From positions 496,001 to 560,000 of the forward strand of contig NIVC01000176.1 of assembly GCA_002269645.1 (NCBI GenBank): 64,000 nt of DNA, read 5' to 3'. Under the pieces are notes generated by a model. It did no database searches. It saw only the letters and a program-made list of their open reading frames with translations, and was not told the origin of the DNA. Source of the DNA: Macrostomum lignano. Lineage: Eukaryota. The position numbers were made by a program, and so were the translations under genes. This document shows, piece after piece, positions 9,901 through 38,591 of this stretch. Numbering within the stretch: the first letter of the stretch is position 1; every line of letters starts with the position of its first letter.

Positions 9901-12900
9901 ATTCTCAAGCACTGAGGGTGTAGGAACGCATTCTAAAGCAGAAACTCAGCCAAATCAAGGGCAAAGGTGGTAAAACCAGTTTACCTCAGCAGTTCTTATC
10001 ACTTTTTCTCTATTATGATATGTCGGACTGCGATGGTCATTGGACTCCGATGACTGGGACGCAGCGCCATGACCATTTAGCTGCCATGGACGATGGTAGT
10101 CTGATGGGGAATGAGAAAGTTGAGCAAATAGTTTGTAGAAAGCCCAATTTCTAAATTGGAAATAAAGGAAATCATATATTAATTAAAAACTTCTTTTCAA
10201 TCACTTACCATAATCATCATCGTCACTTGTATCGGAGTCAGATGGAACTGCAACAATGCCAGTTAGATAAATGTCAACAAGTATGTATTTAATTCAATAC
10301 TAATGCATTAAATTTTAACAAGCATATGCTCGTAAACTTACCATCTTCATCAAATAGAGCACTGAACAGGTACCACATAAACATGGGATCCTTAAACTTT
10401 TCATCCAAATCTTTCACCTCCTGTTCTGTACCTGTTAGCTTTTTGAAAGCCAATGTCAGTAGCCGAAATTTCTACAAAGAAATAAGAGAAAAAATAGCAA
10501 AAAGTCAATGTTTACATTATCAATACAATTATACAAGTCTGTGAATTTCAACTTACAGAGGCAACAATCTCCAATTCAGACTGATTGAGTCTTTCAGGAT
10601 GCAACTGGATAGCCTGGTTTTTATAAGCAGCCTTAATATCTGCTGGAGTTAGCAATGCATCTAAAAGTTGTTTAGAGATATTATTATTAACATGACCAAG
10701 CCAAACATACAAATAAGCCTACAAAGTTAGCAACAATTACATACATGCGCAACCTTGGGAATCACCCGGCCGTTTCTATTGGCAACACACACATGTAAGT
10801 CGCTATTGGCTGAGAGCAGTCACGCGACTATTATTCTGTCCAATAGCGACTAACATGTGTGTGTTGCCAATAGAAACGGCCGAGTGAATCCCAAGGTTGC
10901 GCCCAAGCATGGCAACAAATACCAACTGATTAAGACTCCAGAATTTGTTATTGTATTAAACAACAAAATTTATATGCTCAATACACAAGAATAATGGCAA
11001 AAATGGCCAATTTTAGGTCTTAGGCCATTGACTTTTTACCTTGTTATTTCAGATAAGCCATGAAAAAACTAAATACAATTGGACCCAATAGGACAATTTT
11101 GCAACAATTTAAATGAACCTTGGAGTGGCAATGTAAATGCTACCATAGATAAATGACAAACTTAAATGATTTATCTAGGCCCATTGCCATATTGCATGGT
11201 TTTCTAGTTTTATTTTAACAAAATTGAATTCTAGTTCTATTTTAACAAAAGTGAATTCTGGTTCTATTTTAACAATGGCACATTTTTTTCAATAGGATAA
11301 AAATTTTTGTATGTATACAACTAGTGCATTCAATTTTATTATTGTCATGGGAGAGGGTAGGATAGTGGGTGCAATGGTAATAAATTCTTTTTTATCTAGT
11401 TGACACAAAATACTATATTAGACAAATTCATTTTATTGAAACTAATATTCTATTTTGTTAGCACTAATGATTGGATAACTATTAAAGCCAGAGACAGCTA
11501 ATTGTCATTGATAAGTTTTTAGGTTATCTACTAGCAATCTTCGCCGATGGGGGACATCTGGATAGAATCCTTGTTCTTTACAAATAAAGACTCCAAGACA
11601 AATAACAAATAGACAGCAAAATAAAGCTTTTATAAAAAAGCAACAGACATTCCCTCTAAAAACAAAACATCCCAAGACAGCAAGCATCCCCAGACAGCAT
11701 TCAAGCATCGATCCCCAAATAGCAAGCATCCCCCAGATAGCAAGCATACCCCCAATAGCAAGCATTCCCCAGACCCCCAATAGCAAGCATTCCCCAGACC
11801 CCAGATAGCAAGCATCCTCAGATAGCAAGCATCCCCCAAATAGCAAGCATTCCCCAGACCGCAAGCAACCCCAGATAGCAAGCATAACCTGGACACAAAG
11901 AGACCTTATAGATATCTAGCAACCCACTCTCAGATAGCAAGTACCCTCCACCCCCCAAGAGCAAGCATCTCCCAATAGCAAGTTACCCCAGTAGCAAGCA
12001 TTCTTCCAATAGCAAGCATCCCCCCAATAGCAAGCATCTCTTAGATAGCAAGCATCCCCCTGATAGCAAGTATCCATCCTTAAATAGCAAACATCCACCA
12101 GAGAACAAGTAGCTAGTGCAATAAGTTCCTTAGCTTAATAGTGGCTCCATTTTGTTTGGCATGACACTTCCTTTTATGTTTTAAACGGTTGTTCTTCTAT
12201 GTTTGAAATGGTGTCTCTTCTATGTTTGACATGGTGGCTCTTTTGTGTTTGACATGATAGCTCTTTAATGTTTGACATGGTGGCTCTTCTATGTTTGACA
12301 TGGGTTCTTTAATATTGACATGGTGGCTCTTCTATGTTTGCCATGGCGGCCCTTTTACATTTAAAATGGTATCTCTGTTATTTTTGACCTGGTGGCTCAG
12401 TTGTCTGACATGGTGGCTCTTTAATGTTTGACATGGAGTCACATATATGTTTGACTTGGTGGCTCTTATATGTTTTACATGGTGGCCCTTTACTGTTTGA
12501 CATCGTGGCTCTTTAACATTTGACATGGAGGCACGTAAATGTTTGTCATGGTGGCTTTTTTATGTTTGACATGGTGGCTCTTTTATGTTTGGCATGGTGG
12601 CTTTTTAATGTTTGGCATGGTGGCTCTTTTATGTTTGACATGGTGGCTCTTTTATGTTCGACATGGTGGCTCTTTCATGTTTTGCATGGTGGCCTTTATT
12701 GTTTGACATGGTGGCTTTTTAATGTTTGACATGGAGGCCCTTTGATGTTTGGCATGGTGGCTCTATAATGTTCGACATTATGGCTCTTTTATGTTTTGCA
12801 TGGTGGCTCTTTTATGTTTGGCATGGTGGCTCTTTAATGTTTGGCATGGTGGCTCTTTAATGTTTGACATGGTGGCTTTTTTGTTTGACATGGTGGCTCT

Positions 12901-24345: not shown

Positions 24346-25935
24346 TCAGTTGAAAAACTTATATAAGAATGCTGATTCATCTTGATCTGTTGCCGGTTGC
24401 CAGCCAGCGGCAGAGAGCACCTGATCGGTGTTCATAGGCAGCAAGTTCACACGCCAACAGCCCCTAGCGGACGCTAGCTGCTCAAGCCTAAGCCGTTGAG
24501 CTTTAAAAGCGGCTCGAGTTGGACTTGGCGGTGACGGAAACTGCAGCTGTTGCACCGACGGACTTTGGCGTCTGTTACGCCGTTTTCTATTAACTTGACG
24601 CGGTCGCTTGTTGCCAACGTGAGTAGACATTTTATCGAGTTTGTCTCTCGATAAACTAACATCCGAGTCAGTTCTGCTCCTGCTACGCAATCGCCTACTC
24701 TTCGCCTCTTCTTCAATCGCCAAGCCACCGATCGAGCCAGCACTAGGCTGTTGTTTGTCAATTGACGTTGGCTTGTTGCCAACGTCAGTACCAGACAAAC
24801 TCAACCGGTCTCTCGATAAACTAACATCGGAGTCGGTTCTGCTCCTGCTGTTGCTACGCAATCGCCTACTGTTAGTCTGTAGATCCGGCTGTTCAGCTTC
24901 AATCACCCTGCTACTGTTCGAGCGAGCACTAGGCTGTTGTTCGTCAATCCTAGTCAGTGCAACGCTACAGCTCGGTAGTTGAAGTCGATTCAAAACAACG
25001 CTACACGACGGGAACGCTTCAACTGGCAGGCGTTCCAGCACAACGCTGCAATCTTTAATCTGCGGCGCTGCTTTAATCGGCTGCTTGGATTGTTTAAGAA
25101 GCTGTCGCCGTTTCAAAGCTTGACAATCTTTAATAATTTTGGTGAGTTTCTTTTCACGCCTAGCTCGAAGCACTCGCGACTTGCAGCCCTGATAGGACCA
25201 GAAATGACAATAGCGACTGCTCAGCCGCAGCCGGTCTATTCGGCTTGATCCGCTATACCCAGTGGCCGGAATTCGACCAGTAGGAAATCGACTGCCAGGA
25301 GCGGCGGCGCAGAACTTTTCATAGCCGTGCGGATCGACAATCTGCCTGGGGAACAGGCCGGGCACGCGGCAGCCAAATTCGCTGGTGACGCCAACCCGAC
25401 TAACGGCCAGCATTGGCTGCCAAAACAGCTCGCTGTCCGGACTAATGCAAGCCGATTCGATACTGTCCCGGTCGCCACACCGCCTGTTCAACAGATCCCC
25501 ACTGTCAATGTCTACTGTGCTAAGCCTGTCAGGCTGCTGCACGCTGCGAAGGTTTAATCCGGCATTGAATAGACTGCGCTCCTGACTGATCGGCGGCAAC
25601 AAAGGCCTTGGTGGAGAACAGACGCTGCGGCAGCAAACAAGAAAATGCTGCACAAGCTCCTGTTTGCTCAGAAAATTTTCTGCGCACAAACCGCAAGGAT
25701 AAATATCTGGGATAGCATGTAGCTGTTTCTGCTTCTGAAGCAGCATAATCTGTTCGCACTCTTCTTTTACTTCTCTGGGCAAAGGCAGAGGTGACATTGG
25801 CGCAACTGTCTGTTTCTGTTGCTGCTGCTTCTGGGGAGATTCAGTATATGGCTGCATTGGCCGCGCAGTCTGCTTGTGGTTGTTAATCAGGCGCAGCGCT
25901 TCTTGTTGCTGCACTGATGAATTTCTTGGCTTCAT
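24346..25935 (-). CDS. Intronless 529-aa putative nuclear protein: C2HC zinc finger, three CSVxL motifs, duplicated RS-rich basic segment
   Basis: Open 1.6-kb non-repetitive ORF. CGLC-x12-HFLVC fits a CX2CX12HX3C finger. It also contains DCSVVLERL/SCSVVLNRL/SCSVALTRI, RRLRS...RTDSDVSLSRD twice, and the NLS-like KRPRQVNRKRRNRR. Confidence 0.75.
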   Translation of the reverse strand: MKPRNSSVQQQEALRLINNHKQTARPMQPYTESPQKQQQQKQTVAPMSPLPLPREVKEECEQIMLLQKQKQLHAIPDIYPCGLCAENFLSKQELVQHFLVCCRSVCSPPRPLLPPISQERSLFNAGLNLRSVQQPDRLSTVDIDSGDLLNRRCGDRDSIESACISPDSELFWQPMLAVSRVGVTSEFGCRVPGLFPRQIVDPHGYEKFCAAAPGSRFPTGRIPATGYSGSSRIDRLRLSSRYCHFWSYQGCKSRVLRARREKKLTKIIKDCQALKRRQLLKQSKQPIKAAPQIKDCSVVLERLPVEAFPSCSVVLNRLQLPSCSVALTRIDEQQPSARSNSSRVIEAEQPDLQTNSRRLRSNSRSRTDSDVSLSRDRLSLSGTDVGNKPTSIDKQQPSAGSIGGLAIEEEAKSRRLRSRSRTDSDVSLSRDKLDKMSTHVGNKRPRQVNRKRRNRRQSPSVQQLQFPSPPSPTRAAFKAQRLRLEQLASARGCWRVNLLPMNTDQVLSAAGWQPATDQDESAFLYKFFN

Positions 25936-26117: not shown

Positions 26118-27033
26118 CAGGGGTCGGCAAACTTTTTTACCTCAAGGTCCAGATAGAGAACCTAGAGCAAGGGTCAGCAAACTTTTTTTCCTCAAGGTCC
26201 AGATAGAGAACCTAGAGCATGGGGTCAGCAAACCTTTTTACCTCAAGGACCAGATAGAGGACCTAGAGCATGGGGTCAGCAAACTTTTTTACCTCAAGGA
26301 CCAGATAGAGAACCTAGAGCATGGGGTCAGCAAACTTTTTTACCTCAAGGACCAGATAGAGGACCTAGAGCATGGGGTCAGCAAACTTTTTTACCTCAAG
26401 GACCAGATAGAGAACCTAGAGCATGGGGTCAGCAAACTTTTTTTACCTCCAAGACCAGATAGAAAACCTAGAGCATGGGGTCAGCAAACTTTTTTTACCT
26501 CCAAGACCAGATAGAAAACCTAGAGCATGGGGTCAGCAAACTTTTTTTACCTCCAAGACCAGATAGAGAACCTAGAGCATGGGGTCAGCAAACTTTTTTA
26601 CCTCAAGGACCAGATAGAGAACCTAGAGCATGGGGTCAGCAAACTTTTTTTACCTCCAAGACCAGATAGAAAACCTAGAGCATGGGGTCTGCAAACTTTT
26701 TTACCTCAAGGACCAGATAGAAAACCTAGAGCATGGGGTCTGCAAACTTTTTTTACCTTAAGGACCAGTTAGAGAACCTAGAGCAGAGGAAAGAGAATAA
26801 AGGAAAAAGAAAAGAGAAATATAATATGTGAGAGAGAATAAAAGAAAAAAATTAAAAGGAAAAAAAAACAGAAAATAAAAAATATGAGAGAAAAAAGAAA
26901 ATAAAAAAGAAAAGAGAAAAAGAAGAGAGATAAAAAGGTAAAAAAGAATAAAGTAAAATAAAAAAGAGGCTAGTGCCAAAAGCCAAAAGCTAGAACAAGG
27001 CCAGAGACTAGGGACAAGAGTTTGCCAACAATG
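26118..27033. mobile_element. hAT-like MITE whose left terminus is tandemly amplified (~13 x ~51 bp, 26118-26785), followed by a purine-rich tract
   Basis: Starts CAGGGGTCGGCAAACTTTTT. Unit is GGGGTCAGCAAACTTTTTTACCTCAAGGACCAGATAGAGAACCTAGAGCAT. A degenerate right end AGTTTGCCAACAATG ends at 27033. Confidence 0.7.
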
Positions 27034-27549: not shown

Positions 27550-27855
27550 TTCTAGTTAATTTGGCAACAAGTCAGTTTAGCGACAGCCAATATGGCGAAT
27601 GCTACGAAATCTACAAAACTAGAAAACGAAATTTAACATATTGCCATTTGTCCTTGCCACGTTTTCAAAAAGGTTACATGTACACTTGGCCTACAAGTCA
27701 CATTTTGACGCATTAATTATTTATTAGAGAAGTATGCATGGCATATCATATTTAATTCACAATTATTTTTAATTGCCAAACTTACTGTCCCCAAATTGAC
27801 TTGTTGCCAAATCGGCTGTCGCCAAGTCAACCTATCGCCCAATTAACTGGTTCCC
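27550..27855. mobile_element. Degenerate inverted-repeat element
   Basis: TTGGCAACAAGTCA and GCGACAGCC at ~27560-27590 are mirrored by TGACTTGTTGCCAA and GGCTGTCGC at ~27797-27822. Confidence 0.4.
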
Positions 27856-28105
27856 GCTCTAACTCTAACTAACCCCAATTGATTCTTACTACTAATATTC
27901 TATAGTACTAGGATTAAGAAGGCCCTAGGCTAACTCAAGTTACAATACAATATACCTATAGCTTATTTAATATATAAATATACAATATAACTTAAGCTAT
28001 ATAGGCCTAGCTTATACTAGCTTTTTTGCTGAATTGATTTAAATTGCATTATAATATTATATTAGTCCCTAAGTAACGTCTTAAATCTCTTGATATTGAT
28101 ACTAA

Positions 28106-28364
28106 GGGCCTTTTCATATTACAAATTCCAGAACCAGAATCGGTTCGGAATTCCAAGAAAAACAGCAGTATAACTATTAAACTCTGTTAATATTTGACTG
28201 CCTTAACAACCTAACTTAGCACAATTTTCACTTTTTTCTTGGCGATTGTCATTCAATAATAAAAACTTTATAGCACGTATCTCCCTCTAGTTATGGAGAC
28301 AAAAAGTTATACTTCACAAATTGGTTCTGGTTCTGGAACCAGAGCAAGCAATATGAAAAGGCCC
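28106..28364. mobile_element. PIF/Harbinger-type MITE (259 bp)
   Basis: Perfect 15-bp TIR GGGCCTTTTCATATT/AATATGAAAAGGCCC, TAA on both sides, and subterminal inverted TTCCAGAACCAGAA. Confidence 0.85.
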
Positions 28365-31300
28365 TAAGTTATGCCAAAGACTAAAACAAAGACTAAGATG
28401 AGTAGGCCCTAGTACTTATATTTGTAAGACAGTAGCCTAGGTCGAAAGATATAGAATTTTAGGCCTACTAATGGCTAAATTTACTTTAGCTTTGATTACT
28501 TTTTAGGGCCGTGAGATTAAAAGTCCAGCAGAAATTTAATATCATTAAAATTTTAAAACTATAAAACATCTAAATTCAATAATTTGCTTGGCCATAAGTA
28601 CTTCAAGGATGCAATTTTTTTCTGACGTAAAACTCAAGAATAAATGTTGGATAAATGGTGCAAGTCCGGATCATGTTACGTGTTTTACAACTTTAAAATA
28701 ACAAAACAGTACTTTAGAAAAAAGCGGATTTTATCAATAAAAACTAAAAAACTTACTATATGAAATATTTTTTATCAAAAAGCTGCACTATTTTTCAGGT
28801 GAGTTGTCACAAATTTATTTTCAAACAGGTTGAATTTTCTTTTTTGTAGATCCATGGTACGTGGAGTATATGATGGAGTTTACGACTACTAACTTAGGCC
28901 CTAGTTATTGATAAGCGTGTGGATTTTCGACACTCAAAACATTTTGCTGAAAAAGCGTCTTTTGAGTGAAAGAAGCTTGTGTTTCCTAATAATTTTTTGC
29001 TAACTGAGCTATAAAAATTTAAGCAAGTAACACCAGTCAGAAAAAGTCTCTGCCTGCCTCTCTAGCTTGCCTGACTTGATCTTTGGCTTTAAAGTCAGTT
29101 AGCCCAAGAAAAAGCACATTTACATTAGGCCTAGTAAAGTAAGTTAGCACTTTCATTATCTAGCATTTTCTTATAAGCATAACTTTAAAATTAAAGATCA
29201 AGAATGCAGTCACTAAGTCATACTATCTATTCCATTTGACTGTGAATAGCTCAAGCCAACATTGGCAAATGAATTTTCTGTGGTTAGGCCTAGCCTAGTG
29301 ACAGAAATCATTCCCACAGCATATGTCGATCAATGGGATGGCTATCTTGCCTAATGCCTATATGCCATACAGATAAATAGAAAATTATTCCCATAGTATC
29401 TTAGCCCTAGGAATAAAATTGAAAGATAAAGGTGCCAATCATTTCTGTGACAAGTCATTTCAAAAACAGACATTTCAGTGACAAATTGTTGTTTTGGTGA
29501 CAAGTTACTTCTATGATAGACATACTTGACCTTTCTTTGATGAAAAATAAAATATTCAAGAAGTTTGTCAATTTAGTGATTAAAGGTGCTTCATAACATC
29601 ATAATGTTAGTTAGTAATTATTTTTGTTAAGATTTTTGTTTTGTATATATCTTCAAAATTCTGTCAAAATATGAAAATTTTAAAGAAAAATTAAAACTAA
29701 TAATATATCGTTTCATTTTTATGCAGATTGATTTATATTTTTCATAGAATATTCTTTAAGGTAAACCTAGATTAGAGGCTCTATGTTTATGAGGATCCTC
29801 ATAACAAAATGCCTACCACAAAAGAAAAGCAAGGTTTCGAAAAGGTTCAATAAATGTAAAAGATTGCAACCTTTAAATTAAAAGTATATAAACAAAATTA
29901 AGCAAATCTATTTTATCATGTTAGCAATCTAAAATTTTAGGCTTCATTTAATTAAGATTGATAATCTAATTTTATGCTTAAAAATACAATAGCTATCATT
30001 TAAAGGCCACACTCTAGATCATATGGTATATACCCAAAAATTTAGGCATGCATTGGCCTTGCATACTAAAAATTGTGCATAGTTGGCGTGCGTCACTCCT
30101 AAGAAAATAGTATGCATGCACACCTGGCATGTACTTTATAGAAGCATGCATAGGAGTTATTTTGAAGTAGAAAAAATGAATAAAGTTAATTTATAAGTAT
30201 ACATTTTAAGCTTTCTAGTTTCTTTAAGTACAAATTGTTGTGTGTATCAATTTTTAGCCATAAATAGTGTCACCAAAAAGCATAAAAATGAACCAAATTA
30301 TTTGCTAATAGGGGTCTATTATACAATTCACAAAAGGTCAATTATTGTTATAATACTAGCATATTTTGAAAATAGGCATGCATTAAATTTTTTGGTATGT
30401 AATTATTCACTTTTTGTTTGGCATGTACCCAGCATGATCCAGACTATGGCCTAAAGGGTTTTTTATTACCAAAGTGATTTACTTGTCATTGAAATGATTA
30501 TTGCCAAAACAAAGTTTAATATTTTGGTCAAAGTATCGATAAATTCAAATTTAACCTTTAAAATGCAAATTAAAACTCAATCAAATGCTCAATGCTCTAT
30601 TTGGCATCAAGTCCAAAGTAAATTGTTGGGCTCTAATAAAATTGATGACCCCAAAATGACTATTACCAAACTGCCACCATTTAGACTACAGTAAGTATAT
30701 TATTTTATAGTATATCTAATAGTTGTGATAATAATCATAGTCTGTCACTGAAGCAACCAGTTTCCCTTTGGTATAGTCTATAAAAATATGACTTAAGACC
30801 TTTGGCTAAGATGCTAATCTTTTCAATGACAATAATAAGCTTTTCTTTTTTGCAAAATAAATCTATTATACTTGCATTGTAGTTATAGACTAGTAGCATG
30901 ATATCAAAACTTTTAGGCTTTGGGCAATTGTATTTTGCATTTATTTGATTTCTATATCTTGTTTTCCTTTAGGTGCAGGTTGTTTTAATGATAAGTCTTT
31001 ATTTTGTAGAAGGTTTTTTATAGTCTAGGATACAAAATCTAATTTAGTTCTAGGGTAAATAGACTTTATTAAGGACCTTGTGTTGCCAATATGTATGCAA
31101 AAGGCAAACAAAAAATAAAGCAATTGCAATGCTATTATGTTCAAAAAGTAAATATAAAGTAAAAACAGTTTATCTTTGAATTTTATTCAATTTATTTAAT
31201 AGCAATATTGCTAATAAATTTTATCAATCCACTTGATGAAATTCAAGTTGATCAAAATCAACTTTAATCATTATATCTATAAATTAGGATGTACAACCTT

Positions 31301-31823
31301 TGAAATTAAAAGAGCAGGTAAATGTAATACCTAGAGATTAAAGTTAAATTTTTTAATTTAATTTCTTTTTATCTATAATTAATATTTAGATATATATTTA
31401 CTATACTTAAAACATATTTATTTTACCTATCTATTTTGCTTAAAATATAAAACTAGTATATTTGACCCTTTAAAAAATTTATTTTAAAATTTACTATACC
31501 TATATATGTTTTAATTTACTAAAACATTGACATACTTAAACTAATGAGTTCTATTGATATGATAATTATGTAGTATAATTTATTAATGCTTGAATAAATA
31601 AAGCAACAATTTAATTGAGAAATTAATATCAATGTGTATATACTTTTCTTGCAATATTGTAAAGATTTTTAATTTTAAATTTAAAGTATTTTAGAGTTTT
31701 TTAGATTGACAATAGCTAATAGTTGAATTTTTTAGTCAAAGATTTAAAGACTAATATTAATATTTTATTTTATTCATTTTAGGCAAACCAAGATGGCTGA
31801 TATTTTTCTGAAATTTAGAATTT

Positions 31824-32895
31824 GGTAAGTCATAGAAGGGTAAGTAAGTATTGGTCAATGTGGTAAGTAGACAACATAGTAGTAAATATAAATTATTATA
31901 ACTACAAGTTAGTTTTAGTAAATAGAAATCTGTCTATTAGGTTTTGATTTATGAAAGTTTTTAAGCAAGTTTTTTTAAGAACTAAAGATGATTTAAATAC
32001 AACTATCCAGAACTTATTGAACATCAGATTCTTTAGTTAATAGGTCCTTTTAGATTTTAAACATGAAGCTCAATAAAGGATAACTTTTAGTGCATGAATA
32101 ATAAGTCATCAATTTATGTACCCTTAAGCACAAAAAATAGTAAATGATAATAGTCAAAATTTGATAATAAATATATGTGAAATTTATCAGTCATCAGAAA
32201 ATAATGTATCATATATTAGTAAACAATTTCTGTTTAATATATTATGTTGTTATTCAAATTGATCATTGTTAAACTTGGGTGGTAAGTATTAACTAATGAA
32301 TATATATGGTAAGTAGGTAAGTAGATCTGGGCTTGCTATGCAATTGTTAATAACAATCAATTTTTAAGTATGTGATCAGTTAAAATGGTAGGACATTATG
32401 GAATATTGCCTTTTCCAAGTATGGAATCTAAATGTAAGTTACTATGAGGGGCATTCCAAAAGTCTTTTATTTTGATTTTTTACCTCTTAACTAGGTAAAT
32501 ACTGTCACGAACTAAAGTTCAGAGAATATTTTAGATAACATTTTACTGTCTTTACCTTGTCAAGAGTTAGAAATCCATACCAAGGACTTTATTATGGGCT
32601 TCATGTTTAGCTTGTATTCCTATATGTGCATAGCAGATGCCATTTTTGTCCAACTAAGATAATATTCGGTTGAAGGAGCAGCACTAAAGCCAGCTTAATC
32701 CTGCCCTATGGTCCCTCTGTCACCCCCAACAATTCAACTTACAGGTAAGTACAGGTGCAGCAGAACAAAGGTAAAAAAGCGCATACAATTAGCTTTTTAC
32801 AAAATCTGCCCGACCGTAGGCCAAGTTAAGATAAGTAAGACAGTCGGAAGGGACTCTCGGTGAGACACCCGGCACTGTTGCCTTGCCTGGTAAGT
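31824..32895 (+). promoter_or_regulatory. Cluster of eight perfect 5' splice-site/U1-binding motifs (GGTAAGT) upstream of U1-70K
   Basis: GGTAAGT starts at 31824, 31839, 31862, 32281, 32308, 32316, 32744 and 32889. The motifs are directly seen; their function is inferred. Confidence 0.55.
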
Positions 32896-32950
32896 GGCAG
32901 TCGGTCTTCTAAATCGGAATCATTCTGAGACTCAACACGGCACTGTTAGT

Positions 32951-35753
32951 ATGACGCAATACCTGCCGCCTAACCTGCTGGCCCTGTTTGCTCCGCGCGA
33001 TCCGCTGAACTACCTGCCACCATTGGACCGGCCGCAGCATTACCGAACCCTGCCCTACACTGGCGTTGCCCAGTTCCTTGGCGAATTCGAAGATCCCAAG
33101 GATACGCCGGTGGTTGCTAAAGTTGAGAGTCGCGATGAAAGACGCGAACGCCGCAATAAAGAGCGCCAGGAGCAGGCGGCTTATAAACTTGAGCAGGTGA
33201 GCAATTATTAATAAGTTTTTTCTGGCGTTTTCTATTGAATTTTAAATTTACCTTTAACTAATGCGGACTCCCCCCAGAATGTCGATTCTAACGCTTAATA
33301 TTATAACTCTGGTTGAAGTGCACTCTGCAAAAATACTGCAATTACTTCAGTCTGACCTTTCTCAGACTGAAAGGTCGGGGGTTCGATTCTCGACTCACTC
33401 GGAAAAATTTGTGTCCTTGAGCAAGACAGGCAATTCTGCATTGCTTCAGTTCACCCAAGCTGTAAAATGGGTGCCAGCATTAGCTGGGGTAATTGAAGGT
33501 GTGTGTGTGTGTGTGTGGCGACCCCCCAGTCCTTCGACTGAACAGCCGTACGCAGCCTTCAGATGCGCCTCACAATAGCTGCGGCTAAGCTGTCGGTTGC
33601 ACATCTGGCCCAATTGGGGCAGGTGAAATCAATTATTATCATTATTGTCTGTCAAACTTTTTTTCTACTATTAGTAGTAAAACTGCTACAAAAATCCGCA
33701 TACAAATCAATTTCAGGACCTGGCCATGTGGGATCCGCACGATAATCCCAACGCTACTAGCGATCCGTTTAATACGCTATTCGTTGCTAGAATTGATTAC
33801 GACACCACTGAGGCTAAGCTGCGTCGCGAGTTCGAGACCTATGGTCCAATTAGAACTGTCCGAATCGTGCATGATAAGCGAAATGGTGAGTTTTTGGGGT
33901 TGTTGTTTTGCTCTTAAGGCTAAAATATGAGATTTAAGATCCAAGAGTCAGTGATTGGAATTCATTGAGATTGAGATAACAGTGAGACCATGGCTCAGTG
34001 ATTGAGATGGGATATCACAGAGACCATGGCTCAGTGATTGAGATGGGATATCACAGAGACCATGGCTCAGTGATTGAGATAGGATATCACAGAGACCATG
34101 GCTCAGTGATTGAGATAGGATATCACAGAGACCATGGCTCAGGGATTGAGATGGGATATCACAGAGACCATGGCTCAGTGATTGAGATGGGATATCACAG
34201 AGACCATGGCTCAGTGATTGAGATGGGATATCACAGAGACCATGGCTCAGGGATTGAGATGGGATATCACAGAGACCATGGCTCAGGGATTGAGATGGGA
34301 TATCACAGAGACCATGGCTCAGTGATTGAGATGGGATATCACAGAGACCATGGCTCAGTGATTGAGATGGGATATCACAGAGACCATGGCTCAGTGATTG
34401 AGATAGGATATCACAGAGACCATGGCTCAGGGATTGAGATGGGATATCACAGAGACCATGGCTCAGGGATTGAGATGGGATATCACAGAGACCATGGCTC
34501 AGTGATTGAGATGGGATATCACAGAGACCATGGCTCAGTGATTGAGATGGGATATCACAGAGACCATGGCTCAGTGATTGAGATGGGATATCACAGAGAC
34601 CATGGCTCAGTGATTGAGATGGGATATCACAGAGACCATGGCTCAGTGATTGAGATGGGATATCACAGAGACCATGGCTCAGTGATTGAGATGGGATATC
34701 ACAGAGACCAACGCTCAGTGATTGAGATGGGATATCACAGAGACCAACGCTCAGTGATTGAGATAACAGTGAGACCATGGCTCAGGGATTGAGATGGGAT
34801 ATCACAGAGACCAACGCTCAGTGATTGAGATAACAGTGAGACCATGGCTCAGGTATTGAGATGGGATATCACAAAGACATGGCTCAGTTATTGAGATGGG
34901 ATATCACAGAGACCAACGCTCAGGGATTGAGATAACAGTGAGACCATGGCTCAGTGATTGAGATAACAGTGAGACCATGGCTCAGGGATTGAGATGGGAT
35001 ATCACAGAGACCAACGCTCAGGGATTGAGATAACAGTGAGACCATGGCTCAGGGATTGAGATGGGATATCACAAAGACATGGCTCAGTTATTGAGATGGG
35101 ATATCACAGAGACCAACGCTCAGGGATTGAGATAACAGTGAGACCATGGCTCAGGGATTGAGATAACAGTGAGACCATGGCTCAGGGATTGAGATGGGAT
35201 ATCACAAAGACATGGCTCAGTGATTGAGATGGGATATCATTGAAACCCCCAGCTGATCCCCACCATCCCTACGCTCTCAGGGCGGCCCCGCGGCTACGCC
35301 TTCATCGAGTACGAGCACGACCGCGACATGCACACGGCTTACAAGCACGCCGAAGGCAAGAAAATCGACGGTCGCCGCGTCCTAGTCGACGCTGAGCGCG
35401 CCAGAACAATAAAAAATTGGCGCCCTCGCCGTCTCGGTGGCGGCCTGGGCTCGACTCGGCGCGGACCGCCCGAGCAGAATGCCCGCTCCGGCCGGGATCG
35501 ATCCCGGGACCGCGATCGGGACCGGGACCGGGATCGCAGCGCCAGACGGTCCAGATCCCGCGGTGGCGGTCGAGACCGGGACCGGGACAGGGACCGAGAT
35601 CGGGACCGCAACCGGGATCGTGACAGGAACCGGGACAGGGACCGAGACAGGGACAGGCGCGACCACCACCGGGGTCGGAACGCCGACCGGCACGGCCGGA
35701 GTCGATCTCGCGATCGTCGGAACGGCGACCCGACGCCCAGCCTTGACTATTGA
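32951..35753 (+). CDS. SNRNP70: U1 small nuclear ribonucleoprotein 70 kDa (295 aa)
   Basis: Exons 32951-33196, 33717-33885 and 35281-35753 (GT-AG, phases 0 and 1). Sequence includes [102 protein letters not shown] and an RD/RS tail. Confidence 0.97.
33365..33515 (+). mobile_element. tRNA-derived CORE-type SINE fragment in U1-70K intron 1
   Basis: B-box GGTTCGATTC, followed by TGTGTCCTTGAGCAAGAC...CTTCAGTTCACCCAAGCTGTAAAATGGG (CORE/MIR-like) and a (TG)n tail. Confidence 0.7.
33975..35240. repeat. 36-bp minisatellite (GAGATGGGATATCACAGAGACCATGGCTCAGTGATT) in U1-70K intron 2
   Basis: About 35 tandem copies, with shorter GAGATAACAGTGAGACC variants toward the 3' end. Confidence 0.98.
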
Positions 35754-36374
35754 TTGGCGCATTCATTAATTTATTGATTATTACATAATTTACTAATTGT
35801 AAGCAATTCATAATTATTCACTTTGTCTGCGTTTTCTATCAGTCTGTTTCTGTTTGGTTAGTGTTTTTGGCCGTAGTAAATAATTGAAAAAAAACGTTGG
35901 ATTCCAGCATAAGAAAAAATGCTTTTCAACTACTTACTCGTACAGTTCAGTAGAATCCCCCCCTAGTTTAACCGACTGTTAGAGAGCTTGTAAAAAATTA
36001 GGTAAAAACGTCATTTTTAATAAGCAGTTATCCGACTGCCACTCTTCAACCAGCCCGCAATTCAAGAAAGAATACCCATTCTGCTGTTAGCTAATATGAC
36101 CTGATTGCGCTTTTAATAATTAAAACAATAATCATAATACCTATTAATATGATGCTGGTTTAAATATTATTATTTTCTCCAGTGTCCAGTTTAAACCGGT
36201 TTCACCCGCCCTGTCGTTGCGCTCTGGTAAATAATTTCTCTCATTGTGCGTGTGTGTGTGCGCGCCTTTGACTTTGTTCTTTTAATTCATTGTAATTGGT
36301 CTGTTGTGTGGTCTTGTTCCAACCCCCCCCCCAGCCACCAACTGCCGCCTCCACTGATGGTTAAGAGGGCTCGA

Positions 36375-37095: not shown

Positions 37096-37232
37096 AGTTA
37101 ATTGAAAACACCAATTAGATGAATGAGGTACAGTCTATTTACATAACCGTAGGTATTACTATCAGTAGCTGATAAAATGAGTAATGATTTTTACAGCGAG
37201 CTGACCTGCCACCTCCCCGAAGCGAATTATTC

Positions 37233-38591
37233 ATGGACAAGCATCTGTTCAATTTGAAATTAGCCGCCAAAGATTTGGAACGCAACGCTAAGCAGTGCGA
37301 TCGAAGCGAGGCAGCCGAGCGAGTCAAACTGCGCAACGCTATGCTAAAGGGCAGCATGGACGCTGCCCAGATACACGCCGAGAATGCTATTAGGCAGCGT
37401 AATCAGGCGCTTAGTTATCGGCGAATGGGCGCCAGGATTGACGCAGTGACTAGCAGAGTGCAGACTGCTATCACCACGAAACAGGCAAGCTAGATATTAA
37501 AGATCTAGATATCATTAAAGAATGCTGTTGGATACAATCCAATTAGATGTTAGATATGGACACTTTATGATAGATTACACGATATTGAATCGAGGTGTTA
37601 AATATGTTAGACACCGTAGAATCACGGTGTGTTGGACATGTTAGACATCGTATAATCAGAGTATGTTAGACATGTTAGACACCGTATAATCAGGGTGTGT
37701 TAGAAATGTTAGAAATCGTATAATCAGGGTGTGTTAGACATGTTAGACACCATGGAATCAGGTGTGTTAGACACCAGGGAATCAGGGTGTGTTAGACATG
37801 TTAGACACCAGGGAATCAGGGTGTGTTAGACATGTTAGACACCAGGGAATCAGAGTGTGTTAGACACCAGGGAATCAGGGTGTGTTAGACACCAGGGAAT
37901 CGGGGTGTGTTAGACATGTTAGACACCATGGAATCAGGGTGTATTAGACATGTTAGACACCAGGGAATCGGGGTGTGTTAGACATGTTAGACACCATGGA
38001 ATCAGGGTGTGTTAGACATGTTAGACACCAGGGAATCAGAGTGTGTTAGACATGTTAGACACCATGGAATAGAGGTGTCAGAAATGTCGGGCACTCTGAA
38101 ACAATGTCAGCTCCATCATCCAATCGCTGTCACGTGACACCCCGCAGGTCACGGGCAGCATGTCAGGCGTAGTGAAAGGCATGGAGGCGGCCATGCGCAG
38201 CATGAACCTTGAACAGATGTCCAAGCTGATGGAAAAATTCGAACGCGAATTCGAACACCTGGACGTCCAGTCGCGAGTTATGGACGACACGATGGCTAAT
38301 GCGTCTACTCTGTCGACACCGCAGGCGGAGGTCGATTCGCTGATACAGCAGTCGGCTGATGAAGCCGGCATCGAGCTCAGGCAGCAGCTTCCGGATAGCG
38401 GCAAAGCCGCTCCCGTTGGAACCTCCACCGTCAGCAGCGAACAGGTTTTTTAGAGCTTTTCTTTGCTTTTTTCAAATAAAGTTCTTTCTCCTACTGTAAG
38501 TAGTGCAGCTGAAGCATGTATTGCATGTACGAAATATGCTTTTTTCCAGGACGAACTGACTCAACGCTTGGCCGCTCTCAGGCACAAATGA
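37233..38591 (+). CDS. CHMP1B: ESCRT-III subunit CHMP1 (CHMP1B/Did2-like, 196 aa)
   Basis: Exons 37233-37484, 38148-38444 and 38550-38591. Sequence reads MDKHLFNLKLAAKDLERNAKQC...IHAENAIRQRNQA...QTAITTKQ|VTGSMSGVVKGM...EQ|DELTQRLAALRHK, colinear with CHMP1 family proteins. The A/B paralogue assignment is tentative. Confidence 0.95.
37595..38070. repeat. ~34-bp minisatellite (GTGTGTTAGACATGTTAGACACCAGGGAATCAGG) in CHMP1 intron 1
   Basis: Tandem copies become more degenerate toward the 5' side. Confidence 0.93.

What the first reader, a model, noticed from the sequence alone, without database searches (positions are those of the whole stretch)
31781..32951. Array of eight perfect U1-binding donor motifs in front of the U1-70K gene: candidate autoregulatory U1 sensor leader
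Seen: GGTAAGT occurs 8 times on the sense strand within 1.07 kb, in three groups (31824/31839/31862; 32281/32308/32316; 32744/32889). Weaker donor-like sites lie at ~32771 (AG|GTAAAA) and ~32860 (CG|GTGAGA). By eye I found only two other plus-strand copies in the rest of the window (2270, 55530). A rough expectation at ~28% GC is ~0.05 per kb. The first group follows a good acceptor (TATTCATTTTAG, 31782), defining a 42-nt mini-exon with an upstream ATG (31793) and three alternative donors. An acceptor-like TGTTAG ends 1 nt before the real ATG. Established: GGTAAGT pairs with the U1 snRNA 5' end, and vertebrate SNRNP70 is homeostatically controlled by an alternative NMD exon flanked by cryptic 5' splice sites. 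Inference: this lineage may have built an analogous U1-level sensor in the 5' leader or outron, switching leader splicing, uORF inclusion, trans-splicing or U1-dependent premature cleavage according to U1 snRNP abundance.
Basis: partly seen in the sequence, partly recalled or inferred. Interest (0 to 1): 0.8.

Follow-up and report, generated by a model that had tools for sequence, protein, structure and literature searches.

The report
U1-binding site array before flatworm U1-70K
Just upstream of the flatworm Macrostomum lignano's gene for U1-70K, a core protein of the splicing particle U1 snRNP, lie eight perfect docking sites for that particle; they probably let the gene sense U1 levels, but no RNA data were available to prove it.

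Summary
GGTAAGT occurs 8 times on the + strand in 31824-32895, never on the - strand there, and only 4 more times in the whole 64 kb. Dinucleotide shuffles expect 0.17 copies, and no repeat family accounts for them.

The window is Macrostomum lignano. The gene is a true U1-70K: 3 CDS exons, 295 aa.

New comparative evidence:
- In frog, wasp, Daphnia, a gastropod and a nemertean, the U1-70K intron matching human intron 7 carries an invariant double donor core, GGTTTGTAT-N4-8-GGTAAG. Human intron 7 is the proven U1-dependent autoregulatory site. A crinoid lacks this core but has donor clusters there.
- That intron often holds further perfect GGTAAGT copies: five in 873 nt in the gastropod.
- M. 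lignano has lost this intron and the core. Its only donor array lies in front of the start codon.

A relocated or re-invented U1 sensor in the 5' leader is therefore the best reading (about 0.45). It remains untested, because no transcript, transcription start site (TSS), spliced-leader (SL) or sister-species data could be reached. Six of the eight sites could lie upstream of the promoter.

Verdict: a real feature and a new variant of a known kind.

The parts
31770..31782 (+). Strongest polypyrimidine/AG acceptor-like site of the region (attttattttattcattttAG|G). It coincides with a GC step from 10-18% to 23-33%.
   Evidence: only two acceptors with at least 68% pyrimidines occur in 31.3-32.96 kb
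31783..31824 (+). Candidate 42-nt mini-exon, decoy exon or first exon. It carries a uATG at 31793 in a strong context (AAGATGGC). The uATG is in frame with the main ATG if donor 31824 joins acceptor 32949. It is stopped by the TAA of the first GGTAAGT if donors 2 or 3 are used.
   Evidence: sequence reading; usage not shown
31824..31868 (+). Group 1: GGTAAGT at 31824, 31839 and 31862, plus an overlapping GTAAGT (31844) and a weak GTCAAT donor (31854). Donors are spaced 15, 4, 10 and 9 nt.
32281..32322 (+). Group 2: GGTAAGT at 32281, 32308 and 32316. The last two are a tandem GGTAAGTA-GGTAAGTA.
32484..32500 (+). Second strong acceptor, placed directly against a donor-like site (ttacctcttaacTAG|GTAAAT). 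This resembles a recursive splice site.
32738..32776 (+). Group 3a: TTACAG|GTAAGTACAG|GTGCAG ... AG|GTAAAA. It contains the best U1 match of the whole window (CAGGTAAGTAC, 10 contiguous nt) directly after a YTNCAG-type acceptor.
   Evidence: acceptor consensus from PMC8629364
32860..32895 (+). Group 3b: CG|GTGAGA (32860) and GGTAAGT (32889). A GGCACTGTT direct repeat (32871, 32939) brackets the latter.
32944..32950 (+). Acceptor-like TGTTAG|T, one nt before the start codon.
32951..33196 (+). U1-70K CDS exon 1 ([10 protein letters not shown]...), donor CAG|GTGAGC.
33717..33885 (+). U1-70K CDS exon 2, donor ATG|GTGAGT.
35281..35753 (+). U1-70K CDS exon 3. It runs without interruption through ...[19 protein letters not shown]..., so the ancestral 'intron 7' is absent.
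35437..35945 (+). Alternative intron implied by UniProt model A0A1I8IJB1. The donor CTCG|GTGGCG sits at an ancestral intron position and the acceptor is GTACAG|TTCAGTAG. The product is a 192-aa protein lacking the RD tail.

Best explanation
The eight GGTAAGT heptamers are a selected, strand-specific array of high-affinity U1 snRNA-complementary sites. They lie in the 1.1 kb directly upstream of the start codon of the Macrostomum lignano U1-70K gene.

Most likely they lie in the gene's 5' leader (non-coding exons and introns, or the outron) and act on the RNA as U1 snRNP docking sites in a negative feedback loop.

Proposed working:
1. When U1 snRNP is plentiful, it fills the closely spaced sites.
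2. This defines a decoy mini-exon behind the strong acceptor at 31782, makes neighbouring donors obstruct one another, or both.
3. Transcripts are then diverted into leader isoforms that carry a uATG/uORF, or that keep a U1-bound unspliced leader. Such isoforms are poorly exported or translated.
4. When U1 is scarce, the ATG-proximal acceptor (32949) is joined simply to the proximal donor 32744 or to the spliced leader, giving productive mRNA.

The array would do the job of the ancient bilaterian double-donor module in 'intron 7', which this flatworm has lost.

Shown: the array, its statistics and strand bias, the gene's identity, the loss of the intron and core, and equivalent donor clusters in orthologues.

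Inferred: transcription through the array, U1 binding, the direction of regulation and the exact isoforms.
For: 1. The array is non-random and unique. There are 8 copies against 0.17 expected, and it is the densest donor-like cluster on either strand of the 64 kb.
2. All eight sites are on the sense strand of U1-70K. Their flanks share no similarity, there is no residual periodicity, and no other copy of the region exists in the window. Perfect motifs in unrelated flanks argue for selection on the motif and for an RNA-level role.
3. The sites pair 7-10 contiguous nt with the canonical U1 5' end. The gene's own CDS donors pair 3-5 nt.
4. In human SNRNP70, a cluster of 5' splice sites binds U1 additively, activates an upstream 3' splice site and lowers U1-70K through NMD and intron retention (PMC3798272; PMC7373989).
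5. The core of that cluster, GGTTTGTAT-N4-8-GGTAAG, is invariant in the orthologous intron of frog, nemertean, wasp, gastropod and Daphnia. That intron also holds the densest donor clusters of the nemertean and crinoid loci, and five perfect GGTAAGT within 873 nt in the gastropod.
6. M. lignano has no intron at that position and no such core anywhere in the window.
7. Group 1 has the vertebrate layout: a strong acceptor, a short exon with stop codons, then tandem donors 9-15 nt apart.
Against: - There is no evidence of transcription, TSS position, splice junctions or SL addition for this locus.
- Six of the eight sites lie 630-1130 nt upstream of the ATG, in DNA of 15-33% GC. They may lie upstream of a promoter near about 32.65 kb.
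- Only two of the eight sites have the consensus A at -2.
- The ATG-proximal acceptor is TGTTAG with a poor pyrimidine tract. The species consensus is CAG / YTNCAG.
- Feedback through a 5' leader has no reading frame to poison, so the repressive step is conjectural.
- Wasp and beetle U1-70K loci have no array of perfect sites.
- Conservation in other Macrostomum genomes or in the paralogous M. lignano copies could not be tested.
- The UniProt model suggests another possible regulated event at the 3' end.
Confidence: 0.45

Rival explanations
1. Ordinary leader architecture with no feedback role. The heptamers are the donors of one or several alternative non-coding first exons or 5'UTR introns. 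As promoter-proximal U1 sites, they serve generically to boost transcription and to protect an AT-rich leader from premature cleavage and polyadenylation (the U1-PAS axis, telescripting).
For: The sites are sense-strand only and lie upstream of the ATG. Site 32744 (CAG|GTAAGTAC), with acceptor 32949, would make a plausible 206-nt 5'UTR intron in the GC-normal promoter-proximal segment. Frog and probably Daphnia also have an acceptor just before the ATG. PAS hexamers are fewer in the array region (about 2/kb) than in the 5 kb upstream (about 6/kb).
Against: No other gene in the window has anything similar, and its real donors are mostly imperfect. Eight perfect sites, several only 8-27 nt apart, are far more than one or a few leader introns need. 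PAS depletion is seen on both strands and is not specific. Occurrence at the very gene whose orthologues carry U1-site clusters for autoregulation would then be a coincidence.
Confidence: 0.25
2. The array belongs to a separate sense-strand non-coding transcript, such as a promoter-upstream RNA or lncRNA. Its U1 sites tether it to chromatin or control its stability, without direct coupling to U1-70K mRNA processing.
For: Groups 1-2 sit in AT-rich DNA far from the ATG. A compositional step at 31780 and an AAGATGGC (YY1-like) motif at 31790 could mark an independent start. From my own knowledge, U1 sites are known to retain ncRNAs on chromatin.
Against: Groups 3a and 3b continue the array right up to 56 nt before the acceptor next to the ATG. 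No known RNA family matches the region. There is no independent terminator or PAS cluster between the groups and the gene.
Confidence: 0.12
3. Neutral by-product. The copies arose by local micro-duplication, from a decayed minisatellite or from a transposable element that happens to contain GGTAAGT. They have no function.
For: The genome is extraordinarily rich in minisatellites (153 TRF rows in 64 kb). Two copies are an obvious 8-nt tandem (32308/32316), and GGTAAGTAAGT at 31839 is slippage-like. MITE-like inverted repeats lie in the same AT-rich block.
Against: Flanks of the eight copies are unrelated, and masking the motif leaves no periodicity or inter-group similarity. A decaying repeat would lose core and flanks alike. 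There is no second copy of the region in the window and no repeat family. Strand bias is 8:0. After collapsing the tandem pair and the slippage, at least 6 independent perfect copies remain against 0.17 expected.
Confidence: 0.08
4. DNA-level element: an enhancer or promoter cluster of binding sites for a transcription factor that recognises (T)GGTAAGTA.
For: The extended motif TGGTAAGTA recurs: T at -2 in 5 of 8 sites and A at +7 in 6 of 8. The position upstream of a gene fits.
Against: A strict single orientation (8:0) is unusual for factor sites. The motif is exactly the U1 complement and the gene is U1-70K. Orthologues carry the same heptamer inside an intron where U1 binding has been shown experimentally (PMC3798272). 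T at -2 is not significantly enriched in this AT-rich DNA.
Confidence: 0.06

Closest known systems
Vertebrate SNRNP70 (U1-70K) intron-7 'exon 7a' / decoy exon with cryptic 5' splice sites A, B, C and D (Rösel-Hillgärtner et al. 2013, PMC3798272; Parra et al. 2020, PMC7373989)
   Same: Same gene family. Both have a cluster of closely spaced sense-strand 5' splice-site motifs downstream of an alternative acceptor and a short exon with stop codons. The vertebrate cluster is proposed to read out U1 snRNP abundance. My alignment shows the double donor core of that module is shared from human to protostomes.
   Different: The M. lignano array lies upstream of the start codon, not in the intron between the ...EYEHERDMH and AYKHADGKK exons. 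That intron is absent here. The invariant core GGTTTGTAT...GGTAAG is absent. There are eight perfect consensus sites spread over 1.07 kb in three groups, rather than three weak-to-medium sites within about 40 nt. There is no reading frame to interrupt, so NMD by a premature stop cannot be the read-out in the same way. The host also has SL trans-splicing.
U11 snRNP-binding splicing enhancer (USSE) in the U11-48K and U11/U12-65K genes (tandem U12-type 5' splice sites; PMC5473595 and work cited there)
   Same: A gene for an snRNP-specific protein carries tandem copies of that snRNP's own recognition motif. Binding of the snRNP diverts the transcript to unproductive isoforms, giving homeostatic feedback.
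   Different: It involves the minor spliceosome (U11) and a U12-type motif, with two copies at a fixed spacing, located in an intron or 3'UTR. It is conserved in sequence from plants to animals. It is a functional analogue only, not a member of the same family.
Intronic pseudo-5' splice sites acting as U1 sensors or silencers (for example the ENOX1/Enox ultraconserved pseudo-5'SS, PMC13100119)
   Same: These are unspliced consensus AG|GUAAGU motifs that bind U1 snRNP and make an alternative splicing choice depend on U1-70K/U1 levels.
   Different: They consist of a single 9-nt element in an unrelated target gene, so there is no array and no autoregulation of a U1 component.
Recursive (ratchet) splice sites, (Y)nNCAG|GTAAGT (from my own knowledge; Drosophila and vertebrate long introns)
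   Same: Acceptor and donor lie directly against each other at 32738-32750 (TTACAG|GTAAGT) and 32484-32500 (TAG|GTAAAT).
   Different: Those serve stepwise removal of very long introns. Here the interval is about 1 kb, the pyrimidine tract at 32743 is poor, and most of the eight sites have no adjoining acceptor.

Membership tests
SNRNP70 intron-7 autoregulatory 5'ss cluster (exon 7a / decoy exon) | Lies in a U1-70K gene | tested here: met
   The downstream gene has Pfam U1snRNP70_N (3e-28) plus RRM_1, and is 100% identical to an M. lignano U1-70K UniRef entry. The array ends 56 nt before the acceptor next to its ATG.
SNRNP70 intron-7 autoregulatory 5'ss cluster (exon 7a / decoy exon) | Located in the intron between the ...EYEHERDMH exon and the AYKHADGKK exon | tested here: not met
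   M. lignano exon 3 (35281-35753) is continuous across this point. The array is upstream of the start codon.
SNRNP70 intron-7 autoregulatory 5'ss cluster (exon 7a / decoy exon) | Conserved core GGTTTGTAT-N4-8-GGTAAG (human sites B and C) | tested here: not met
   The core is invariant in human, frog, nemertean, wasp, gastropod and Daphnia. There is no exact GGTTTGTAT in the window, and 1-mismatch hits are at chance level and not in the gene. Only a look-alike is present, GTAAGTAT-N10-GGTAAG at 31844.
SNRNP70 intron-7 autoregulatory 5'ss cluster (exon 7a / decoy exon) | Three or more closely spaced sense-strand 5' splice-site motifs | tested here: met
   Eight perfect GGTAAGT plus weaker sites, all on the + strand, with spacings of 8-27 nt within groups.
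SNRNP70 intron-7 autoregulatory 5'ss cluster (exon 7a / decoy exon) | Alternative 3' splice site shortly upstream of the cluster, defining a short stop-containing exon | tested here: inconclusive
   The best acceptor-like site of the region ends at 31782, 42 nt before group 1, and the interval contains stops and a uATG. Usage is unknown.
SNRNP70 intron-7 autoregulatory 5'ss cluster (exon 7a / decoy exon) | Bound by U1 snRNP; isoform choice responds to U1C/U1-70K/U1 level; unproductive isoform degraded or retained | not testable with these tools
   This needs RNA data and knock-downs. No M. lignano transcript or contig could be retrieved.
USSE-type snRNP feedback element (U11-48K/65K) | Tandem U12-type 5' splice-site motifs (ATATCCTT-like) recognised by U11 | tested here: not met
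   The motif here is the U2-type/U1 consensus GGTAAGT. The resemblance is functional only.
SL RNA gene | 35-nt M. lignano SL sequence followed by a GTAAG donor and an Sm site | tested here: not met
   The SL (PMC8629364) is absent from the window at up to 3 mismatches. The best local match in 31-33 kb is 10 nt. There is no Rfam hit.
U1 snRNA gene or pseudogene on the opposite strand (CAGGTAAGTAT is the complement of the U1 5' end) | U1 snRNA sequence and structure | tested here: not met
   There is no Rfam U1 match at the gathering threshold in the window, or at E<=10 in 30.5-33.7 kb. The sequence next to the heptamers is unlike U1.
Dispersed repeat / minisatellite | Copies share flanking sequence or regular period | tested here: not met
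   There is no repeat family, no TRF array in 27.3-33.9 kb, no other copy in the window, and no residual similarity after masking the motif. A genome-wide test was not possible.

The most novel reading that the evidence does not exclude
In this trans-splicing flatworm, the array may turn the acceptor beside the start codon into a U1 meter. SL trans-splicing does not need U1 snRNP. The balance between cis-splicing from the upstream GGTAAGT donors (U1-dependent, giving uORF-bearing or retained leaders) and SL addition at the same acceptor (U1-independent, productive) would therefore read out free U1 directly.

In addition, group 1 may be a displaced descendant of the ancient bilaterian intron-7 module rather than a convergent invention. 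Its GTAAGTAT-TGGTCAAT-G-TGGTAAGT resembles Daphnia GTTTGTAT-GGTCAAT-TGGTAAGG and nemertean GTCAGTAT-GGTTTGT-TGGTAAGT.
Probability: 0.12. Interest if true: 0.85.

Novelty: new variant of a known kind. Interest (0 to 1): 0.62.

Why it matters
Homeostasis of the U1 snRNP is known mechanistically only in vertebrates, through a 5' splice-site cluster in SNRNP70 intron 7.

If the M. lignano array works as proposed, it would show two things:
- The principle 'a U1 protein gene senses U1 through copies of U1's own binding site' is maintained even when the ancestral intron is lost.
- The sensor can be rebuilt in a 5' leader, where the read-out must differ from premature-stop NMD.

In a species with SL trans-splicing, it would also offer a natural system for studying competition between U1-dependent cis-splicing and U1-independent trans-splicing. 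M. lignano has RNAi and transgenesis, so the idea is directly testable.

There is also a by-product. The double donor core of the vertebrate module appears to be shared with protostomes. The papers I could read describe it only as conserved among vertebrates, 'from fish to mammals'.

Tried and rejected
- **Transcript or paralogue retrieval failed.** The UniRef fragment P0001 and the neighbouring 529-aa ORF are not on record. The exact-sequence look-up found only the UniRef entry, without contigs. Transcription, paralogue conservation and sister-species conservation therefore could not be tested.
- **Known RNA families.** None at the gathering threshold in the window. Only chance-level miRNA/lncRNA hits appear at E<=10 in 30.5-33.7 kb. 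SL RNA and U1 (pseudo)gene readings were rejected.
- **Repeat explanations.** I ran direct and inverted repeat search, TRF, self-BLAST of 26.8-32.95 kb against the window, and offset-identity and unit alignments after masking the motif. Nothing was found. The even spacing of group starts (457 and 463 nt) stays unexplained.
- **A decayed upstream U1-70K copy.** tblastn with five U1-70K proteins finds no pseudo-exons upstream.
- **Sense-strand depletion of poly(A) signals as a sign of transcription.** Density is lower than in the upstream block, but on both strands, so it is not informative.
- **A 5'UTR intron conserved 1 nt before the ATG.** It is seen in M. lignano and Daphnia, lies 9 nt upstream in frog, and is not evident in nemertean, crinoid or gastropod. 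It is not usable as evidence.
- **Bacterial-type promoter and terminator scan**. It is irrelevant to a eukaryote and at shuffle level.
- **A 12-nt terminal inverted match ending at 31780** (I4). By my own estimate about 11 such matches are expected by chance in this AT-rich 6.5 kb. I rejected it as a transposon end.
- **Sequence homology of group 1 to the ancestral module.** Local alignments are suggestive only (z up to 4.4, post hoc, 21 pairs tested). The composite pattern hit is partly circular.

Full report
**1. The observation.**
- GGTAAGT lies on the + strand at 31824, 31839, 31862, 32281, 32308, 32316, 32744 and 32889.
- The rest of the 64-kb window has two more + copies (2270, 55530) and two - copies (10203, 10336).
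- It is the most frequent 7-mer of the region.
- The weaker sites at 32771 and 32860 are present. So are the acceptor ending at 31782, the ATG at 31793, and TGTTAG one nt before the ATG at 32951.

**2. More than chance.**
- Dinucleotide-preserving shuffles of 31781-32951 give a mean of 0.17 copies and never more than 3 in 20,000 trials. No 7-mer of at least three letters reached 8 in 3,000 shuffles.
- I also used the real sequence as its own background. Of 137 non-repetitive 1171-nt windows, a top 7-mer count of 6 or more occurs only over this region, beside one degenerate repeat, and in the RD-repeat coding part of the gene.
- A scan-statistic bound for 8 of 10 + strand copies falling within 1072 nt is about 1e-10.
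- The flanks of the eight copies are unrelated. Masking the motif leaves no periodicity and no similarity between the three groups. Nothing else in the window resembles 26.8-32.95 kb.
- Only 32308/32316 (an 8-nt tandem) and the GTAAGTAAGT at 31839 look like slippage. That leaves at least six independent perfect copies.
- Perfect cores in unrelated flanks, all in one orientation, point to selection on the motif and to a role on the transcribed strand.
- The sites pair 7-10 contiguous bases with the canonical U1 5' end. CAGGTAAGTAC at 32744 is the best match in the whole window. The two CDS donors of the gene itself pair only 3-5.

**3. Where we are.**
- The gene downstream has three coding exons: 32951-33196, 33717-33885 and 35281-35753. 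It encodes 295 aa.
- It carries Pfam U1snRNP70_N and RRM_1. Its first 187 residues are identical to the Macrostomum lignano entry A0A1I8IJB1.
- The window is therefore M. lignano, a flatworm in which about 30% of genes receive a 35-nt spliced leader. Its donors are GT[G/A]AG, its acceptors CAG and its SL acceptors YTNCAG (PMC8629364).
- The nearest upstream ORF is a 529-aa ORF on the opposite strand (24346-25935). So 25.9-32.95 kb is a divergent intergenic region, and U1-70K must have its own promoter somewhere within it.
- That interval contains a 51-bp minisatellite (26120-26785). It also contains an AT-rich block with MITE-like inverted repeats.
- GC steps from 10-18% to 23-33% exactly at 31780, then rises to 40-55% from about 32620.

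**4. What it is not.**
- No Rfam family matches.
- The SL sequence is absent.
- No U1 gene lies on the other strand.
- No tRNA was found.
- There are no U1-70K pseudo-exons upstream.
- No repeat family was detected.

**5. The precedent, checked.**
- They bind U1 snRNP additively. Binding activates the 3' splice site, and the resulting isoform carries a premature stop and is degraded. The switch is conserved in mouse and zebrafish (PMC3798272).
- The same element acts as a 60/72-nt decoy exon that promotes intron retention. It is described there as conserved from fish to mammals (PMC7373989).
- The published morpholinos give the human sequence GTGTATGGTTGGTATAAGGGTTTGTATCATGGGTAAGATC.

**6. Orthologous loci.**
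I fetched U1-70K loci with 10-kb flanks from seven species: a nemertean (L001), a frog (L002), Daphnia (L003), a crinoid (L004), a gastropod (L005), a wasp (L006) and a beetle (L007).
- The frog intron after ...EYEHERDMH contains the human element almost unchanged. This fixes that intron as 'intron 7'.
- The same intron in nemertean, wasp, gastropod and Daphnia contains the same core. In a six-way alignment, GGTTTGTAT and GGTAAG are invariant and lie 4-8 nt apart. The nemertean and wasp share GTTTGTATGTGTGGTAAG exactly.
- Further donor-like clusters sit in the same intron:
  - Nemertean: GGTCAGT, GGTAAGT twice 34 nt apart, GGTGAGC twice, and GGTAAAAGGTAAAG. This is the densest cluster of its 43-kb locus.
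  - Crinoid: two GGTAAGT 34 nt apart, plus CAG|GTAAACAG|GTTGGTATA.
  - Daphnia: GTAAGTATCCTGGTAAGT and others.
  - Gastropod: five perfect GGTAAGT within 873 nt, all on the sense strand. The bound for this by chance is about 2e-5.
- The wasp keeps only the core, and the beetle locus has no GGTRAGT in the gene. Arrays of perfect sites are therefore common but not universal.
- None of the nemertean, frog and crinoid loci scanned for donor clusters shows one in the 10 kb upstream of the ATG. Heptamer searches find none there in Daphnia, gastropod, wasp or beetle either.

**7. M. lignano against this background.**
- Its exon 3 runs straight through ...[19 protein letters not shown]..., so intron 7 is gone.
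- The core GGTTTGTAT is absent from the window, and the 1-mismatch hits are at chance level and irrelevant.
- The two densest donor-like clusters on either strand of the 64 kb are groups 1 and 2 of the array.
- Group 1 repeats the vertebrate layout. The best acceptor-like site of the region (attttattttattcattttAG, 31782) is followed by a 42-nt interval with stop codons, then by tandem donors spaced 15, 4, 10 and 9 nt.
- Its sequence GTAAGTAT-TGGTCAAT-G-TGGTAAGT resembles Daphnia GTTTGTAT-GGTCAAT-TGGTAAGG and nemertean GTCAGTAT-GGTTTGT-TGGTAAGT.
- I regard that resemblance as suggestive only. It was found post hoc, and two adjacent donors already produce much of the match.

**8. Most likely working (inference).**
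- The array lies in the 5' leader of the U1-70K pre-mRNA and binds U1 snRNP.
- At high U1, occupancy of the tandem sites defines the mini-exon behind 31782. Further leader segments might be defined at 32494 and 32743, where an acceptor directly abuts a donor.
- Alternatively, closely spaced occupied donors obstruct one another. PMC3798272 cites that effect for adjacent competing 5' splice sites.
- Either way, the transcript acquires a leader with a strong-context uATG (31793, AAGATGGC) or retains a U1-bound leader intron. Less productive mRNA results.
- The uATG is in frame with the main ATG if donor 31824 joins 32949. It is closed by the TAA of the first GGTAAGT if donor 2 or 3 is used (sequence reading).
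- At low U1, the ATG-proximal acceptor is used simply, from 32744 (a 206-nt intron) or by SL addition.
- I put this at about 0.45.

**9. Weak points.**
- There are no transcript data.
- Six sites may be upstream of a promoter near 32.65 kb.
- TGTTAG is a non-consensus acceptor.
- The repressive step in a leader is conjectural.

**10. Rivals.**
- Ordinary leader donors with a generic transcription or telescripting role and no feedback: 0.25.
- A separate sense ncRNA: 0.12.
- A neutral by-product: 0.08.
- A transcription-factor site array: 0.06.

The evidence for and against each is in the corresponding fields. The strand bias, the perfection of the cores, and the coincidence with the one gene family known to use such clusters weigh against the last two.

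**11. Comparison and novelty.**
- It works like the SNRNP70 intron-7 cluster and, by analogy, like the U11 USSE of the U11-48K/65K genes (PMC5473595).
- It is not a member of the intron-7 family, because location and conserved core were both tested and not met.
- I file it as a new variant of a known kind.
- It would interest splicing specialists because it suggests the U1 sensor is under enough selection to be rebuilt elsewhere after intron loss. It is also testable in a tractable flatworm.
- The apparent bilaterian-wide conservation of the double donor core is a separate lead worth checking against the literature beyond the library I could search.

Noticed in passing
L002:18593-18611; L001:28328-28346; L006:11529-11547; L005:~96976-96998; L003:~12078-12103: The double donor core of the human SNRNP70 exon-7a cluster, GGTTTGTAT-N4-8-GGTAAG(AT), is invariant in the orthologous intron of frog, nemertean, wasp, gastropod and Daphnia. 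Nemertean and wasp are identical over 18 nt. The papers I read call it conserved only among vertebrates.
   Followed up: partly
L005:96732-97610: The gastropod Gigantopelta aegis has five perfect sense-strand GGTAAGT within 873 nt of U1-70K 'intron 7', about 0.5-1.3 kb upstream of the AYKHADGKK exon. This is the closest parallel to the M. lignano array.
   Followed up: partly
window 35437-35945: UniProt model A0A1I8IJB1 (192 aa, ending ...RPRRLVQ) is reproduced exactly by splicing CTCG|GTGGCG (35436|35437) to GTACAG|TTCAGTAG (35945|35946). The donor sits at an ancestral intron position. The splice removes the RD-rich tail and the normal stop, and may be a second regulated event.
   Followed up: partly
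window 31793-31826 and 32949-32953: The upstream ATG (AAGATGGC; strong Kozak, YY1-like) is in frame with the main ATG if donor 31824 is joined to acceptor 32949, adding an 11-aa extension MADIFLKFRIC. With donors 31839 or 31862, the TAA inside the first GGTAAGT ends an 11-codon uORF.
   Followed up: no
window 31824 / 32281 / 32744: The three groups start 457 and 463 nt apart, yet no residual sequence periodicity or inter-group similarity remains after masking the motif. The even spacing is unexplained.
   Followed up: yes
window 32738-32762 and 32484-32500: Acceptor and donor lie directly against each other: TTACAG|GTAAGTACAG|GTGCAG|CAG and ttacctcttaacTAG|GTAAAT. The first acceptor fits the SL-type YTNCAG consensus. 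The layout resembles a recursive splice site.
   Followed up: no
window 37189-37235: The next gene downstream (Snf7/CHMP1-like, exons at 37233-37493 and 38160-38453) has a typical SL-type acceptor, TTTTACAG, 37 nt before its ATG. It lies 1.5 kb after the U1-70K stop, and half of that gap is a minisatellite. The two genes may form an operon.
   Followed up: partly
window 33964-35239 and 33290-33500: U1-70K intron 2 is almost entirely a 36-bp minisatellite (36.5 copies). It sits at a position with no intron in the orthologues examined at that point (frog, Daphnia). Intron 1 holds a tRNA-like SINE fragment (GGTTCGATTC at 33380) and a (GT)n run.
   Followed up: no
window 32871-32879 and 32939-32947: A 9-nt direct repeat, GGCACTGTT, brackets the last GGTAAGT and the sequence up to the ATG-proximal acceptor. 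This could be a small duplication that created this site or intron.
   Followed up: no
L001, L003, L005 and the Pecten record: U1-70K lies next to a BTB_2/Ion_trans potassium-channel gene in nemertean, scallop, gastropod and Daphnia, which suggests conserved microsynteny. In the M. lignano window, the upstream neighbour is instead a 529-aa ORF with no Pfam match.
   Followed up: no
window 27554-27848 and 28101-28369: Two MITE-like elements with 38-43-nt terminal inverted repeats lie in the AT-rich intergenic block. The whole window is exceptionally rich in minisatellites (153 TRF rows).
   Followed up: no
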